This document shows, one piece after another, positions 13,981-20,915 of a stretch of DNA of 64,000 nucleotides (the first letter of the stretch is position 1; each line of letters opens with the position of its first letter). The stretch spans positions 310,001 through 374,000 of the forward strand of contig NW_026935438.1 of the NCBI RefSeq assembly GCF_032062105.1. Direction: 5' to 3'. The translations under genes were made by a program, and so were the position numbers. This DNA comes from Saccostrea cucullata (taxonomy: Eukaryota). The notes beneath the pieces were generated by a model that ran no database searches, was not told the DNA's origin, and saw nothing but the letters and a program-made list of their open reading frames with translations.

Positions 13981-16900
13981 ATGGCTTCCCTTTTAAACAA
14001 AGTTGTAATTATAACAGGTAAATTTTTTTTCATTTTTTGTATCGATATAAATGCTGAAATTCCTCCAGTTATTTATTGTTTTTTAGCTATTGCAATTTTT
14101 ATGTGACATAAATGAGTTCTATAGTTCATTGCTTCACTGAAGCAATTGATTGGTTGTATGTTGTTTAACGTCCCTCTCGAGAATTTTTCACTCATATGGA
14201 CACGCCTCCACTTGTGGAGAGCAGCAAATTGTGTCCTACTCGGCGGCACTCAGGACCATTGCGCAGTGATTGAATTGTTCACTTAACATAAAAGCAAGGA
14301 AGTTATATATTTATACATGTAAAGACGAATTCTATATCATTGTTTACTTTATGTTTTTATCTCATTCTAAAACAGCATATATTCATGTTCAAATTCGAAT
14401 ATTGACTCCACTTTTTTTTTATCTACGATGTTTTATTTGAATATCAGGTGCTAATTCTGGAATAGGAGCTGCAACTGCGCTTGCATTCGCCAAAACTGGT
14501 GCAAGGTTAGTTTTAGCGGCGCGGAATCAGGAGCGACTAAACGATGTAGCAAATCAATGCTCGGCAAAGGGACTACCACAAGAAAAGGCAAGTAAATAGA
14601 CGGCAAAGGGACTACCACAAAAAAAGGCAAGTAAAATAGACGGCAAAGGGACTACCACAAGAAAAGGCAAGTAAATAGACGGCAAAGGGACTACCACAAG
14701 AAAAGGCAAGTAAAATAGACGGCAAAGGGACTACCACAAGAAAAGGCAAGTAAATAGACGACAAAGGGACTACCACAAGAAAAGGCAAGTAAAATAGACG
14801 GCAAAGGGACTACCACAAGAAAAGGCAAGTAAATAGACGGCAAAGGGACTACCACAAGAAAAGGCAAGTAAAATAGACGGCAAAGGGACTACCACAAGAA
14901 AAGGCAAGTAAATAGACGACAAAGGGACTACCACAAGAAAAGGCAAGTAAAATAGACGGCAAAGGGACTACCACAAGAAAAGGCAAGTAAAATAGACGGC
15001 AAAGGGACTACCACAAGAAAAGGCAAGTAAAATAGAAGCACAAGTACGTATGCATTTCAATAAAATGTTCTGGCTGCTATTTTGAAATACATGTAGTGGT
15101 ATAGAGAATCGTTTTCATTGTATGAGGGAAGAGGTATTCAGAGAGTCACCTTTGGTTGAGAAATAGGTAAGAAATAGCTCTGCACCATCAATATCCAATG
15201 TGTGAAATGTATATAAGTTATGAATATATAATGAGTCAATTTTTTTCTTCTTGATTATGGATATAGGTATTGGTAAAAAGATGTGATGTCACGAACGAAG
15301 AGAATCTGAAAGGTTTGGTTGGATCAGCTATAGATAAATACGGGCAAATCGACATACTGGTAATAAATTTTTGATTTAAAAACATTCACATAGGCCTATT
15401 TATTTTAAATTAAACACTAATTCTTTCCTGAAGTGGAGAAGCAGAAAAACTCAACATTTATTTCAGGTAAACAATGCAGGGAGTGCTCAATATGTCAACT
15501 ATCTTGAAACAACAACGGAAGTGTTTGATACTACCTTTAATCTCAACATCCGGGCCCCCTTTTTTCTCACCAAGCTGTGTACCACACACTTGAAGAAAAC
15601 TAAAGGTGATCAAAGTACTAAGAAGTACAGAGAGCCGGGCTCATTTACAGAGTAGAATGAATTTCTTACATGAATCAAACGTTTATATTCTGATGAAAAA
15701 ATTATTTTACAACTATCAATATAAATGATAAGATACTGACAGTGAGTTTTCGTTCCTAATACCACGGTCCGATTCTGTCAGAATCAGAATTAATCTGGTA
15801 CCGCAGCTGAATGTAAACATTCCAGGCCAGTCTGGTTCCCTCTCCCGCTTTACCTCGTATGTGTAGAGAACTACGACAACACTAATTATCAAAAATCCTT
15901 ACGCTAATGAACTATGTTCTTTGACTTAGGACTGAAGTTTTCAAAGTCATTACTACTAATGTTTTATATAGATAAAACTTTGTTTTATTTTTGTTGCTTT
16001 TAGCGTTTGTATTATCTCAAAAGCGGTTGAGAGTAAGAACTATATTTTTACTCGTAACTTTAAAATGGTGACTATGGGGTGGACTTCCTGCCTTGAACAG
16101 GATGACATAAGCCGGCAATTGCTCTTTGAGCAATAAGCCCAGCTAAAAATCAAAGCTTAAATTCAGTTATGAATTAAACTGAACTAGAGGTACTGTGAGC
16201 AATGAGCTCACTAAATGATACCCCCGCCTCCCATATGTATAAAATGGCAGTGTCCATGTTTTGCTATGGGAAACCCAAAATATGTGTCGGATCAAAGAGT
16301 AAAATAGGAGGCGCACAATGGCAATATGTAATAAAGATTCTTTCAAAGTTACATCAAATTTCATTCAGTGGTATAAGAGGAGTTGCGGATAAGAGATAGG
16401 TACACCAAAGCGTAATAGACGGACGAAGGGACGGACGTACGGACGAACAGACATACCGATTACTATATACCCTCGCAAGATTCCAATAAGAAGTTTGCTA
16501 TTTTATATAGGATGTGTGGTGAATGTCTCAAGCCTTGCGGGACAACGTTCAGTAAGTTTTTACATTTAAACTTAAAGTGTTATTGTATTCATAAAGTGAT
16601 AGAGCTATAGTTTAAACTGTTAAGCATATACTGGCTGCACATGCTACTATATGTTCAGTTTTAATCCCAGTATTCGTTAAAGACACTACTTTATTCTCCC
16701 AGTTTCCGATTGCAATGGTGTACGGAATGACTAAAGCAGCCATGGACCAGTTTACAAGGACTCTGGCGGTTGGTCAGTATTTTATACAAATCACTCTCGT
16801 AGTGTTTCCTGGGTTTATTTTCATTTTTGTCATGTAAATTATCTGTTATTTACAGATCTGGTGAAAGATAGTGTTCGGGTTAATTCAGTAAAGTGAGTAA

Positions 16901-19900
16901 CAAAGAGGAGATATTTTTATCCAAAACAAATAAGTTACGCATTCTGCAATTTAGTACAGTGTATCTTGTTCACACTACTTATTAATTACACTCCAGCCCA
17001 GGAGTTATCGACAGTCTGGAATTTCAGGCTTGGTGTAAAATGCGGAGGATGGAGTCTCCACAAAACTCCAAAATGGAGGGTCAGAGAGTGCAAGGGGTGG
17101 AGCCTCTTGTGTCAGTTTTTATACATTTGCCCGTTTTATCTTTCAATCATTTTAGAAGCTGGATACAACTGGGTTGCTTGTAGAGCTCTCCATCGGTGAT
17201 AAAAAGTGCCTGTCAGAATTAATTACTGAGTCTAGATACTGGTATGTCCCAAAAATTTTATTGCAGATAATTATGTCATGCAGATCACTTTGTCTGCAAA
17301 TTATCAACAATTAAAAAGTATATTTCACATTGCTGTAAAAGCTGCTAAAGCTTCTGTATGTGTAAACCACAAAAAGAAGATACAATTAAATTACAACTGA
17401 AAATGAAATTTAGCACAAAAAAGATAACATGACTTTCAATTATATCAACAACAAATGAGGGGACAATTTTTTGTCATCTTTCCCTAGAAGTTTAGGTAAT
17501 CTAGCCCTTAGCAATTTTAACATTTGGCCCTTCAGATATTTGATACCTATACTAATAAAATCTGTCAAGACCTCATGGGTTACTGCGAGATAGCAGTGTG
17601 AATCAGTCAGTTTCCATTGCACTTAGCATCTGTGATATCGCAAAACAAAATTTAAATCACAAGCACGGACTGCATGCCCCTCATTTGTTTCTCATATCTG
17701 TAGGTCATTCCGATTCTCATTTTGTTGTCTCTTTATCATGATGCTTGTTTCTCATTCTTTTTAGAGCAAAAAAATAAAATAAAAGAAAAACAGTTAATGG
17801 CCAGAGTTCTCCAATAAAACAATCAGTTCATTTACTGAATCTATTATTTAATTATTTTTAATTTTTCTAAAGTGGGATAATATTTCTGAGTGAATAATGA
17901 CATCACGGCACATTTCCAACATCGGACATTGCTTCGACAGCAATCAGATTTCAGATGGTAATAGGTGTTTTGTAATGAGGCCGATATTCCTTGACACCTT
18001 TATATACATATCAGTCTATTTATATATATCTGTATATAATATCACCAAAAGATAATAATTTTGATGCTATTCTGTTTCAGTCAGTCTCCGTTATCGTTAA
18101 AAATTAAATAATCAGCAAAGCTGTTCCCCTCGTTGAAATGTGGTGTTCATTATTTTTTTTTATTACTGTTGCCTGTTTCTTTGTTTCTCATATAGTATTT
18201 TATGGACTTTATAAACAAATGTCATCAGATACTGTCAAATGGTCATCACAAAATCAGGTTGGATCGAGATATAACTGAGTTTCATTCACTCAACTTCAAT
18301 GAAATTATTTTTTTAATTGTTTGGGTAATGTAACACTCTAACACATTCTCACGGAGTATCAGAAAATGAGATGACAGATCTAATAAGCACGTGCTAAATT
18401 TACGACAACACTATGCTCCACCTCCTGCATCTTCTAACACAAGAGGCTCTACCCCTTGCACTCTCTGACCCTCCATTTTGGAGTTTTGCGGAGACTCCAT
18501 CCTCCGCATTTTACACCAAGCCGGAATTTCAGAGGAGGGCTGGCATGACGGAGGAATTCTACAATCAGGTAGGCATCTTAAATTCTCCTGTTGTTTTATC
18601 CAGAATGAGATGTTTTATCAATCAAATCAAATAAGATCTTTGATCCACGGTCACATCGTATCTAGACAAAAATACAGTGTGTATTAAATTAATAGATAAA
18701 AAGAAAATAATTAAATAGCAAACGCTGTCATAAGAGTGTAGTACCCAGAACTTGAGTCTTGGTATCTAGTCGAGAAACAATAATGCTTACTAGTATCAAA
18801 TGATTGTCTTCATGTTTCAAACTGAGCTTTAAATGTTCATGTGAGCATGGAGTCTATATGAGCCTTATATGTTTGATTGATTAGTGCTTAACGCTGAGTT
18901 GGCAATACTCCTTGTATGGGTGTGTTTCACAGAATATTCAATATAATTCATTAGTAGGCTGAAACTTGAGAATTTAATGAATCATAAGTTCTGTCGAAAG
19001 GGAGTTTTTGAAAGTAAAATTGTATGAAAAATATACATGTACCTCCAGGATGAAAAATTACGAAATCTCAAAAACATATCTAATGGGTATAATAAACATA
19101 TTCTGAAAGTAGAAGTGGCTACTTCTTAAAATGTAAGATGTACTGGAAACGTGGTTTTTGGAGCAAAAATGTCCTATATGTGGCCAGCTAGACTCCCTTT
19201 AAAAGTGAAAAATCTTAAACCTTATTGCACTTTTACATGAAAAAGTACCACTCACATTGCGAAAGAAACTGTATACATTTAAAGTGCATAAAACGTAACA
19301 AAAGTCCAGGAATATTTTTTAAGGAAAAACGTCTGATCCTCTTCCCATTGGTCCCCATGATATAAATTAAAGTACTGAGACAGTACTGAAAGACGGGGTC
19401 AAATTAGTTTTCATGCTAGATTTCACAAATATGATTTTTGTAACGATCAGTTTTGATAAAAAAAATTATTAACAAGCTAAAAACAAAATTATGAATATTA
19501 TAAAATCGCATTTTTCTTTTAATTTGAAGTAGAAATTTCAGTAATTGGTAAGTCTAGAAACCTTTTTGAATTGTCCGAATTTCACCTGGTCCGAATTAAT
19601 ATATTTCCGGAAGTAAACAATGGATGATGCGTACGCAGTCGTAATACTACGCAGGAGAGTACTTTGTTTACTAGTGTGTTTTACAATTAATATTTTGAGT
19701 TTACATTTACAAAATGCTTCATTAATTTGATTTAGAAATAAGCTCATATCACTTTCTTCAGTTTGATACAAAATGTTTATATTTTGATCAAAACAATTTC
19801 TGCACTCTTTCATATAGCGTAGATTTAATTCATGTGTTATCACCACGGCTTCCTTTTTGAGGGTCTACAGTAAACTAATAGACGGGGTCACGTGACCCCG

Positions 19901-20701
19901 TCTAAAAAAGGTACTTCCAAAACCTTATTGCACATCTACAGGACAATCACATTCCAAAAGACACTGTGCCTACTGCTTTAAACAGAGAAGAACAATTGGT
20001 AGAAAAACAATAAACTGTTGTTTCGCGAATTCTTTGGTCGATGTAGTGATTTGTGACCTTGTTTCAAATACAATCTCTAAGTCAAATGTTGACTGACGTT
20101 TCTAATGCAGATATTGTTAGGCCATTATTTTTACACTGATTTGTCTATGGATTTACCCGATCAAATTTACCCGATCAACTCAGGTGCACACAGTTAGTGT
20201 GACCACTCGACAGGGGTGCTTACTCCACTATGGCACCTAATCCGATCTTAGATGTGTTTGCTCTGCTCCTGATCTGTATTGTTTTGATGAATTTTTGAGC
20301 AAGATAACTGTTCGTGATCTTCATATTTCACTTACCCCATACCGGGTATATAAAGGAAAATTTGAGATTCTTTTTGCACATCTACAGCACTCGACACTTC
20401 ATATCCACCCGCGCGATAGCCAGTCGTCTTTCAAAATAATTTATTGGTTGTGTCCTGTCGATGTGCAGAAGAATTTTGATAATTTATTTTCATAAAGAAG
20501 GCTAATCAAGCATGCAATAATAGAAACGTTTTTATGTTGTAGTACATAGAAAAACAGAAGGAACTACAGCCTCTGACGGGAGCTGTTGAACCGGAAGAGG
20601 TTGCCAAGGTGATCCTGTTTCTAGCGTCGGACCAATCATCATCGATCACAGGAGAACTAATTTATGTGGATGGAGGGCGTCACGCAATAATGCCCTTGTG
20701 A
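13981..20701 (+). CDS. Classical SDR paralog 2; exon 8 is interrupted by a TIR transposon (functional only if the insert is spliced out, otherwise a disrupted allele or pseudogene)
   Basis: Exons 13981-14017, 14448-14587 (GC donor), 15267-15359, 15467-15605, 16511-16551, 16703-16772, 16856-16892, 16997-17027 + 18533-18568, and 20543-20701. Same intron positions as paralog 1. Motifs TGANSGIG, VNNAG and YGMTK are intact. No other stops or frameshifts seen. Confidence 0.85.
14562..15036 (+). repeat. Minisatellite, 12 x 39/40 bp, made of the SDR2 exon-2 3' end plus its GC donor
   Basis: Unit CGGCAAAGGGACTACCACAAGAAAAG|GCAAGTAAA(A)TAGA. Copies are near-identical and alternate 39/40 bp. Confidence 0.95.
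16181..16480. repeat. Dispersed repeat with GGAC microsatellite (HINE-like), same family as 170-525
   Basis: Shares blocks with 170-525. The GACGGACG...CAGAC tract and TATATACCC end resemble a reversed HINE 5' end. Confidence 0.55.
17027..18522. mobile_element. Mutator-like non-autonomous TIR element (1496 bp) inside SDR2 exon 8
   Basis: 89-bp TIRs (17027-17115 and 18434-18522, 3 mismatches) starting GGCTTGGTGTAAAATGCGGAGG. 9-bp TSD GGAATTTCA at 17018-17026 and 18523-18531. AT-rich interior with no long ORF. Confidence 0.92.
20070..20330 (+). mobile_element. Diverged 3' fragment of the Penelope-like element
   Basis: GTGTGACCACTCGACAGGGGTGCTTACTCCACTATGGCACCTAATCC is the reverse-complement version of the motif at 21320-21380. 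Confidence 0.5.
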
Positions 20702-20756: not shown

Positions 20757-20915
20757 TATGGGGCGCCGTTCTGGTATTTAGTGCCAAAAAGTGATATCAC
20801 CTATTCGAATAGGTGATATCACCTATTCAGTTGATGATATCACCTATTTGAATAGGTGATATCACCTATTCATTTCCATTTTTTTTGGCAGTAAATACCA
20901 AAACGGCACCTCATA
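20757..20915. mobile_element. 159-bp MITE with 6-bp TSD (TAT...ATA termini, IS3EU-like), just 3' of the SDR2 stop codon
   Basis: TSD TCTATG at 20751-20756 and 20916-20921. TIR TATGGGGCGCCGTTCTGGTATTTAGTGCCAAAAA / TTTTTGGCAGTAAATACCAAAACGGCACCTCATA. Confidence 0.85.

What the first reader, a model, noticed from the sequence alone, without database searches (positions are those of the whole stretch)
16997..18568. Mutator-like element inside an SDR2 coding exon that could be spliced out precisely (candidate introner)
Seen: the exon that is continuous in paralog 1 (NPGVVITEFQRRAGMTEE) is split in paralog 2 by a 1496-bp element with 89-bp TIRs and TSD GGAATTTCA. The left junction reads GAA TTT CAG|GCTTGG and the right junction ...CCGGAATTTCAG|AGG AGG GCT. 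Removing 17028-18532 as a GC-AG intron restores NPGVIDSLEFQRRAGMTEEFYNQ exactly, with the donor from the TIR and the acceptor from the TSD plus one host base. A second AG at 18519-18520 is also in frame (+PEFQ). All other exons and catalytic motifs are intact. Established: introner elements create introns through this TIR/TSD geometry, and this gene already uses a GC donor. Caveat: CAG/GCTTGG is a weak U1 match. Unspliced read-through hits TAG at about 17181, so this may simply be a knocked-out allele.
Basis: partly seen in the sequence, partly recalled or inferred. Interest (0 to 1): 0.8.

Follow-up and report, generated by a model that had tools for sequence, protein, structure and literature searches.

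The report
Young transposon breaking an SDR exon
A recently inserted 1.5-kb DNA transposon sits inside a coding exon of the second of two tandem dehydrogenase genes; it most likely just disables a dispensable gene copy, and nothing found here supports a new intron, although no RNA from this allele could be tested.

Summary
Element 17027-18522 is 1496 bp, has 87-89-bp TIRs and a perfect 9-bp TSD (GGAATTTCA), and splits exon 8 of SDR2. Removing 17028-18532 restores the frame, and read-through stops at TAG 17181.

The introner reading is not supported.
- The family has about 60 copies (126 TIR ends) with 9- or 10-bp TSDs of unrelated sequence. The A|G geometry needed for precise removal occurs in 2 of 27 copies, which is chance level.
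- No other copy shows a host-exon context.
- The proposed donor CAG|GCTTGG pairs with U1 at 5 of 11 positions, the weakest of 17 donors in the two paralogs. The real GC donors are AAG|GCAAGT.
- The TIRs can pair in the pre-mRNA (about -199 kcal/mol) and would bury that donor.
- Exon 8 would become 31- and 36-nt microexons.

The allelic haplotig C7528 lacks SDR2 exons 2-3 and exon 8 together with the insertion site. It keeps every exon of paralog 1. SDR2 therefore looks dispensable in this animal.

RNA evidence is inconclusive. One transcript contig (run X6) carries an uninterrupted exon 8, but it comes from an allele about 5% divergent, so splicing cannot be told from an empty site.

Best reading: an ordinary, young, disruptive MULE-like insertion (0.68). 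The scan had not noted this on other DNA.

The parts
1167..12229 (+). Paralog 1 (SDR). Nine exons, intact: 1167-1203, 3146-3285, 9866-9958, 10603-10741, 10845-10885, 11081-11150, 11236-11272, 11382-11445, 12071-12229. Exon 8 is uninterrupted.
   Evidence: All exons are also intact on haplotig C7528, with no amino-acid differences.
13981..14017 (+). SDR2 exon 1 (MASLLNKVVIIT-G)
14448..14587 (+). SDR2 exon 2 (GANSGIG cofactor motif). It ends at the GC donor AAG|GCAAGT.
   Evidence: (PF00106, E 3.5e-7)
15267..15359 (+). SDR2 exon 3
   Evidence: X6 depth arithmetic.
15467..15605 (+). SDR2 exon 4 (NNAG motif)
   Evidence: X6 record 17.
16511..16551 (+). SDR2 exon 5
   Evidence: X6 depth arithmetic.
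16703..16772 (+). SDR2 exon 6 (catalytic YGMTK)
16856..16892 (+). SDR2 exon 7
16997..17027 (+). SDR2 exon 8, left part ((N)PGVIDSLEFQ). Base 17027 is the element's first G and is identical to the host G.
17018..17026 (.). Left copy of the target-site duplication, GGAATTTCA
17027..18522 (.). Non-autonomous TIR DNA transposon, 1496 bp, MULE-like. It is 1.34% from the family consensus and has 6 private substitutions.
17027..17115 (.). Left TIR. It holds the proposed GC donor at 17028-17029.
17181..17183 (+). In-frame TAG reached if the element is not spliced out
18434..18522 (.). Right TIR. It holds the alternative AG at 18519-18520.
18523..18531 (.). Right copy of the target-site duplication, GGAATTTCA. 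The proposed acceptor AG lies at 18531-18532.
18533..18568 (+). SDR2 exon 8, right part (RRAGMTEEFYNQ). Donor CAG|GTAGGC.
20543..20701 (+). SDR2 exon 9, including the TGA stop
   Evidence: (PF13561, E 9.3e-13)
14374..15361 (.). Stretch absent from allelic haplotig C7528 (SDR2 exons 2 and 3). The junction carries a 13-nt filler.
16996..18980 (.). Stretch absent from allelic haplotig C7528: exon 8, the whole element and 412 bp of intron 8. The junction carries a 2-nt filler.

Best explanation
A member of a low-copy (about 60 copies), recently active family of non-autonomous TIR transposons inserted into exon 8 of SDR2. By its 9-10-bp TSDs and roughly 88-bp TIRs the family is best placed in the Mutator superfamily. 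SDR2 is the downstream member of an old tandem pair of classical short-chain dehydrogenase genes. The insertion interrupts the frame right after the NPG motif. Unspliced or mis-spliced transcripts end at a stop 154 nt into the element. Skipping the 67-nt exon shifts the frame. Both routes lose the last 64 residues and probably trigger nonsense-mediated decay. The allele is therefore most likely null or strongly hypomorphic. It is tolerated because SDR2 is dispensable in this animal. The other haplotype has lost SDR2 exons 2, 3 and 8 by deletion. Paralog 1 is intact on both haplotypes. The exact GC...AG removal geometry follows from the element always starting with GGC, plus a TSD that ended in A next to a host G. 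That combination is expected in about 6% of insertions by chance. Shown here: the anatomy, the family properties, the haplotig deletions, the weak donor and the long-term constraint on SDR2. Inferred: loss of function, dispensability, and the absence of efficient splicing.
For: - Element, TSD and frame.
- Family: at least 35 full-length copies at 85-97% identity and 126 TIR ends against 0 in the control. TSDs are 9 bp (16 copies) or 10 bp (11 copies) and of unrelated sequence. The A|G geometry occurs in 2 of 27 copies, with about 1.5 expected.
- Context of other copies: their ORF span across the reconstructed empty site is no greater than at random positions. The two long spanning ORFs look like other transposons' genes, namely a weak Phage_integrase match and an RT-like YRDD motif.
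- Age: our copy is 1.34% from the consensus, with 6 private substitutions.
- Donor: CAG|GCTTGG makes 5 of 11 U1 pairs. The 16 authentic donors make 6-10, and both real GC donors (AAG|GCAAGT) make 8-9. GC donors normally sit closer to the consensus (PMC2490688).
- Structure: TIR-TIR pairing of about -199 kcal/mol covers the donor and the polypyrimidine region of both acceptors.
- Haplotig: C7528 is collinear with C17575 from 308.7 to 332.9 kb at 93-99.7% identity. It lacks window 14374-15361 and 16996-18980. All nine paralog-1 exons are intact there.
- Gene content: SDR2 and paralog 1 are the only close copies in the genome.
- History: paralog 1 versus SDR2 gives dN/dS 0.115 with dS about 1.3. 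SDR2 was a working gene for most of its history and the break is recent.
Against: - No RNA from the allele that carries the element could be examined, so splicing is not excluded.
- All other SDR2 exons and splice sites on this allele are intact. This is expected for a young insertion either way: only about 0.2-0.5 disabling changes would have accumulated.
- The acceptor side looks usable (CAG with a moderate pyrimidine tract).
- The left TIR is transcribed about 1.4 kb before its partner, so U1 could bind before the stem forms.
- If the C7528 allele is null, the element-bearing allele is the animal's only possible source of SDR2. That would fit retained function just as well.
- The haplotig deletions rest on one assembly and were not checked against reads.
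Confidence: 0.68

Rival explanations
1. Nascent intron. The element is removed from the pre-mRNA as a GC-AG intron (17028-18532), with the donor from the TIR and the acceptor from the TSD plus one host base. SDR2 would then stay functional, and this would be an intron gain from a MULE-like element in an animal.
For: Removal restores the exact pre-insertion reading frame. The acceptor context is acceptable. The gene and its paralog already splice a GC donor. All other exons are intact. Introners that take one splice site from the TSD are documented (bioRxiv 10.1101/2022.06.06.494994, PMC11282704).
Against: The donor is the weakest of 17 and departs from the strict consensus GC donors need. The TIR stem can bury it. 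The result would be 31- and 36-nt microexons flanked by 1.5-2-kb introns. Stronger out-of-frame GT donors lie 52 and 83 nt inside the element. The family shows no enrichment of AG-forming sites and no exon context. The element is 1496 nt, against family median lengths of 30-654 nt for introners. The other haplotype shows that SDR2 can be lost.
Confidence: 0.1
2. Leaky allele. Part of the transcripts use cryptic in-frame sites. Options are the GC donor with AG 18520 (+4 aa, PEFQ), or the GT donors at 17088 or 17097 with acceptor 18533 (+20 or +23 aa). These would give a low level of altered but possibly active enzyme, as known for Ds, dSpm and Mu insertions in maize exons (from my own knowledge, not checked in a paper here).
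For: In-frame candidate sites exist and the read-through frame stays open up to 17180. The insertion point lies in the variable loop after the NPG motif, where paralog 1 and SDR2 already differ in length by one residue.
Against: All these sites are weak (5-6 of 11 U1 pairs). They lie within the TIR stem. There is no RNA evidence.
Confidence: 0.12
3. Assembly artefact. The element was placed in the exon by mis-assembly and the real allele is uninterrupted.
For: No public run covers this allele closely (best share of words 0.20). None of the four laid runs shows the copy's private letters.
Against: The 9-bp TSD is perfect and of the family's normal length. The termini are complete and the copy has its own private substitutions. 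A chimeric join would not create a target-site duplication.
Confidence: 0.03

Closest known systems
Ordinary insertional mutation by a non-autonomous Mutator-like element (MULE)
   Same: 9-10-bp TSDs, long TIRs, no coding capacity, low target specificity, insertion into a coding exon with a premature stop. The genome holds many MULE transposase genes (at least 96 PF10551 matches with open frames up to 1130 aa).
   Different: No autonomous element with the same TIR ends was found. The superfamily assignment therefore rests on TSD length and TIR length alone.
Introners (intron-generating transposons; Micromonas, Aureococcus, dinoflagellates, a few animals)
   Same: A TIR plus TSD element inside a gene. 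One splice site could come from the element and the other from the TSD, and removal would leave the mRNA unchanged. An alternative acceptor would add 12 nt, as described for Aureococcus.
   Different: The family is not enriched in genes and has no splice-site-forming target preference. It is 1.5 kb long, and its only constant 'donor' is a poor GC site. No splicing was shown.
Transposons spliced from exons through cryptic sites at their ends (maize Ds1, dSpm, Mu alleles; from my own knowledge)
   Same: A DNA transposon in an exon, with candidate donor and acceptor sites in or next to its termini.
   Different: In those cases the spliced products were observed. Here they are only possible on paper.
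Presence/absence and null-allele polymorphism of dispensable tandem paralogs
   Same: Two different disabling lesions of the same gene sit on the two haplotypes of one individual, and the neighbouring paralog is intact on both.
   Different: Only one individual's two haplotypes were seen. Population frequencies are unknown.

Membership tests
Introner family | Several near-identical copies act as spliceosomal introns of unrelated genes (at least 4 in the screen of bioRxiv 10.1101/2022.06.06.494994) | tested here: inconclusive
   26 other copies were examined. The ORF span across the reconstructed empty site has a median of about 53 codons, against 62 at random positions. The two long spanning ORFs look like transposon genes. 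No annotation or RNA was available, so an intron location of some copies cannot be excluded.
Introner family | Consistent supply or recruitment of both splice sites from the element and its TSD | tested here: not met
   The TSD sequences are unrelated. The 'TSD ends in A, host G follows' geometry occurs in 2 of 27 copies, with about 1.5 expected by base composition. The constant element end gives only G|GCTTGG.
Introner family | Observed splicing of the element from mRNA | tested here: inconclusive
   The depth arithmetic for X6 contig record 17 fits an mRNA with exon 8 uninterrupted. That contig is about 94% identical to the window, so the allele may simply lack the element. The relevant joint was not among the 15 of 201 joints listed.
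Mutator superfamily (non-autonomous MULE) | Target-site duplication of 9-11 bp | tested here: met
   16 copies have 9 bp (one of them with a mismatch) and 11 copies have 10 bp. A 5.1-kb copy also has 10 bp.
Mutator superfamily (non-autonomous MULE) | Long terminal inverted repeats | tested here: met
   87-89 nt, 3 mismatches.
Mutator superfamily (non-autonomous MULE) | Shares its termini with an autonomous element that encodes a MULE (PF10551) transposase | tested here: inconclusive
   The genome has at least 96 PF10551 matches. None lies between a listed pair of TIR ends. None of 12 fetched loci holds the TIR. The 4.27-kb pair at C11096 was not inspected.
GC-AG spliceosomal intron | GC at +1/+2 and AG at the 3' end, in a frame-preserving position | tested here: met
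   17028-17029 GC and 18531-18532 AG. Removal restores the frame.
GC-AG spliceosomal intron | The rest of the donor lies close to the consensus, compensating for +2C | tested here: not met
   CAG|GCTTGG makes 5 of 11 U1 pairs. The two authentic GC donors, AAG|GCAAGT, make 8-9. The rule is from PMC2490688.
Classical short-chain dehydrogenase/reductase (adh_short) | Rossmann TGxxxGIG motif, NNAG, catalytic YxxxK, NPG, and Pfam matches | tested here: met
   ITGANSGIG, VNNAG, YGMTK and NPG are all present. Exon-by-exon matches to PF00106 and PF13561, the best with E 9.3e-13.

The most novel reading that the evidence does not exclude
The element is removed, at least in a useful fraction of transcripts, as a GC-AG intron. 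The donor would come from its TIR and the acceptor from the TSD. That would be an intron gain from a MULE-like transposon in an animal gene, caught while still polymorphic, in an individual whose other allele is a deletion.
Probability: 0.1. Interest if true: 0.75.

Novelty: new member of a known kind. Interest (0 to 1): 0.25.

Why it matters
As it stands this is an ordinary event: a young transposon knocks out one copy of a duplicated enzyme gene, and a second, independent null allele sits on the other haplotype. It illustrates how fast tandem paralogs become dispensable in a highly polymorphic genome. It also shows that a 'perfect' splice geometry arises by chance in about one insertion in 16 for this family. 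It would matter more if carriers turned out to splice the element. Introners are very rare in animals, and this locus would then be a natural test of whether an unspecialised transposon can become an intron at once. One RT-PCR on a genotyped carrier settles that.

Tried and rejected
- **Reads.** High-copy repeats in introns 4 and 8 swamped the joint table, and only 15 of 201 joints were listed, so a 17027>18533 joint could be neither seen nor excluded. Only depth arithmetic on X6 could be used. No run is closer than about 95% to the window.
- **Protein word search.** The query was the ORF across the right junction (window:18503-18631). It found nothing. A blank here proves nothing.
- **Autonomous partner.** The 5.1-kb copy at C11026 is the same element with two nested insertions and no ORF of 100 aa or more. 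MULE-domain loci do not carry the TIR.
- **Haplotig check with long queries.** Other repeats swamped these searches. One search gave the collinear match.
- **Other family copies in host exons.** Rejected on current evidence, but the ORF test is weak.
- **Another close paralog as the source of the X6 transcript.** Rejected: only SDR2, paralog 1 and one 55%-identical gene exist in the genome.
- Exons were searched one by one by reference, and exon comparisons in scripts were done exon by exon. The N run at 11723-11879 was left alone.

Full report
**Anatomy**

The stretch was read directly and scanned for repeats. The element occupies 17027-18522 (1496 bp). Its ends are GGCTTGGTGTAA...TTACACCAAGCC, and the terminal inverted repeats match over 87-89 nt with three mismatches. 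It is flanked by a perfect 9-bp direct repeat, GGAATTTCA, at 17018-17026 and 18523-18531. The host base after the duplication is G, the same as the element's first base. This is why removing 17028-18532 (GC...AG, 1505 nt) gives back the pre-insertion sequence exactly. Translation confirms the frame on both sides. It also confirms the in-frame TAG at 17181-17183 on read-through and the +12-nt option at AG 18519-18520.

**The gene**

Two tandem genes of the classical short-chain dehydrogenase family lie on the + strand. I fixed their exon borders from sequence and reading phase.
- Paralog 1 runs from 1167 to 12229.
- SDR2 runs from 13981 to 20701.
- Both have nine exons of equal length, except exon 8 (64 nt in paralog 1, 67 nt in SDR2).

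Exon-by-exon Pfam scans hit adh_short and adh_short_C2. The motifs TGxxxGIG, NNAG, YxxxK and NPG are all present. Both genes use a GC donor, AAG|GCAAGT, for intron 2. The two genes are 75.6% identical in protein, with dS about 1.3 and dN/dS 0.115. SDR2 is therefore an old duplicate that was kept under purifying selection. The comparison was done exon by exon.

**The family**
- The window's genome is 1.17 Gb in 23,869 contigs. It holds at least 35 full-length copies, 85-97% identical to ours.
- It holds 126 TIR ends with at most 2 mismatches in 24 nt, against 0 for the reversed control. That makes about 60 elements, haplotigs included.
- In 27 copies with both ends, the target-site duplication is 9 bp (16 copies, one with a mismatch) or 10 bp (11 copies), and its sequence is unrelated between copies.
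- Our copy differs from the consensus of the others at 1.34% of sites and has six private substitutions. It belongs to the younger part of the family, whose copies range from 0.4% to 6%.
- A 5.1-kb copy is the same element with two nested insertions and no long ORF.
- The genome is rich in MULE transposase genes: at least 96 PF10551 matches, with open frames up to 1130 aa.
- 'Mutator-like' is therefore the best label, on TSD length and TIR length alone. It is not proven.

**Is it an introner?**

- Precise GC...AG removal needs a 9-bp duplication that ends in A, followed by a host G. Two of 27 copies have it (ours and L015). About 1.5 are expected from base composition.
- The open frame across the reconstructed empty site is no longer than at random positions for the other copies. 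The two long ones look like genes of other transposons. One gives a weak tyrosine-recombinase match. The other has an RT-like YRDD motif seen by eye, with no Pfam hit.
- Published introner families are defined by several similar introns in unrelated genes with consistent splice sites, and their median lengths are 30-654 nt.

**Would the spliceosome use it?**
- In the canonical register, CAG|GCTTGGTG pairs with the U1 5' end at 5 of 11 positions. The 16 authentic donors of the two genes pair at 6-10, and the two real GC donors at 8-9.
- GC donors are known to compensate by staying close to the consensus (PMC2490688).
- Better GT sites lie 52 and 83 nt inside the element but are out of frame. 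Weak in-frame GT sites lie at +60 and +69 nt.
- The two TIRs can pair in the pre-mRNA with about -199 kcal/mol. That stem covers the donor, the alternative AG and the pyrimidine tract.
- Splicing would turn exon 8 into exons of 31 and 36 nt between long introns. From general knowledge of exon definition, this is unfavourable.
- Skipping the whole 67-nt exon shifts the frame.
- The acceptor itself looks usable.
- None of this excludes a minority of correct products.

**RNA and DNA reads**

No public run holds more than a fifth of the sampled words. That corresponds to about 5% divergence. The laying was dominated by very high-copy repeats in introns 4 and 8, and the joint of interest was not among the 15 joints printed. 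One indirect reading is possible.
- X6 record 17 is 647 nt at depth 48.2. It lies on exon 4 at record positions 245-382.
- The binned depths of X6 equal 48.2 x (exon letters in the bin)/187 for exons 3, 4, 5, 6 and 7.
- The bin 18566-18752 reads 0.77, which equals 48.2 x 3/187. This is what a contig ending exon 8 at 18568 would give.
- The record's length budget fits exons 1-8 plus 27 nt of exon 9, with exon 8 uninterrupted.

So an mRNA with a continuous exon 8 exists in that sample. However, it differs from the window at 8 of 138 letters in exon 4. Of the 8 differences listed for exons 3 and 4, 7 fall at third codon positions. It is therefore another, functional allele or population, and may simply lack the element. 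None of the four runs shows our copy's private letters at 17669, 17872, 18089 or 18450. Contigs drop rare variants, so this is only a weak hint that the insertion is absent there.

**The second haplotype**

This is the new piece of evidence. A search of the genome with the flanks found a second contig, C7528.
- Its whole length (26,454 bp) is collinear with C17575 from 308.7 to 332.9 kb, at 93-99.7% identity, with several transposon-sized indels. It is an allelic haplotig.
- It lacks window 14374-15361, which holds SDR2 exons 2 and 3. The junction has a 13-nt filler.
- It lacks window 16996-18980, which holds exon 8, the whole element and 412 bp of intron. The junction has a 2-nt filler.
- The remaining SDR2 exons are intact, with one amino-acid change. 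All nine exons of paralog 1 are intact, with no amino-acid change.
- No other close copy of SDR2 exists in the genome.

The animal thus carries two different lesions of SDR2 and two good copies of paralog 1. This argues that SDR2 is dispensable here. It makes a plain knock-out the economical reading of the insertion. Whether the deletion allele once carried the element cannot be told.

**Verdict**

The element is a real, young, probably Mutator-type non-autonomous transposon in a coding exon. The introner reading is not supported by the family's behaviour, the donor's quality, the RNA structure or the state of the other allele. It is not formally excluded, because no RNA of the carrying allele was available.

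| Reading | Confidence |
|---|---|
| Null or strongly hypomorphic allele | 0.68 |
| Leaky in-frame cryptic splicing | 0.12 |
| Precise intron-like removal | 0.10 |
| Assembly artefact | 0.03 |

The N run at 11723-11879 was left untouched. 

Noticed in passing
window 14562-15036: A tandem array in SDR2 intron 2 repeats the last 25 or so nt of exon 2 together with its GC donor (GGCAAAGGGACTACCACAAGAAAAG|GCAAGTAAA), about 12 times. It creates a row of decoy GC donors. It was also noted by another first-stage finding (s1-701222). I only confirmed, by reading phase, that the first GC donor is the one used.
   Followed up: partly
window 15574-16508 and 19314-20435: Very high-copy repeats lie in SDR2 introns 4 and 8. 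Summed contig depths reach 1e5-2e6 in DNA run X2, against about 10-40 on unique sequence. They swamped the joint table of the read laying.
   Followed up: no
window 19367-19902: A 536-bp stretch is absent from haplotig C7528. Its ends look like inverted repeats (…CAGTACTGAAAGACGGGGTC / GACCCCGTCT…). It is probably a polymorphic small TIR element in intron 8.
   Followed up: no
window 20790-20880: Just downstream of the SDR2 stop codon there is a tandem set of palindromic units (GGTGATATCACCTATTCGAATAGGTGATATCACC...). This may be a hairpin-forming MITE or satellite in the 3' UTR region.
   Followed up: no
G000 genome-wide: There are at least 96 matches to the MULE transposase domain PF10551. 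About 20 have uninterrupted frames of 670-1130 aa, so Mutator-type elements may still be active in this genome.
   Followed up: partly
L004 (C18799:29219-30753) and L021 (C15807:424931-426419): These are the same insertion, with TSDs CCCTAAATAG and its reverse complement, on two contigs. They are presumably haplotigs or a duplicated host element. The insertion sits inside a 294-codon ORF with a weak tyrosine-recombinase match (Crypton- or DIRS-like).
   Followed up: partly
G000:C11096:339508-343776: A pair of TIR ends of this family lies 4.27 kb apart. It could be a copy with a nested insertion or a longer relative.
   Followed up: no
window 18568/20543 junction in run X6: The X6 transcript contigs break at the exon 8/exon 9 junction, with a 30-nt overlap. 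Depth jumps from 48.2 (exons 1-8) to 85.7 (exon 9). This suggests that about 40% of exon-9 transcripts in that sample have a different upstream sequence. It is unexplained.
   Followed up: no
C7528 versus window 1-743 and 308.7-310 kb of C17575: The two haplotypes differ by about 9.6 kb of extra transposon sequence just upstream of paralog 1, and by 0.3% to 7% in point differences along 24 kb. Heterozygosity is very uneven.
   Followed up: partly
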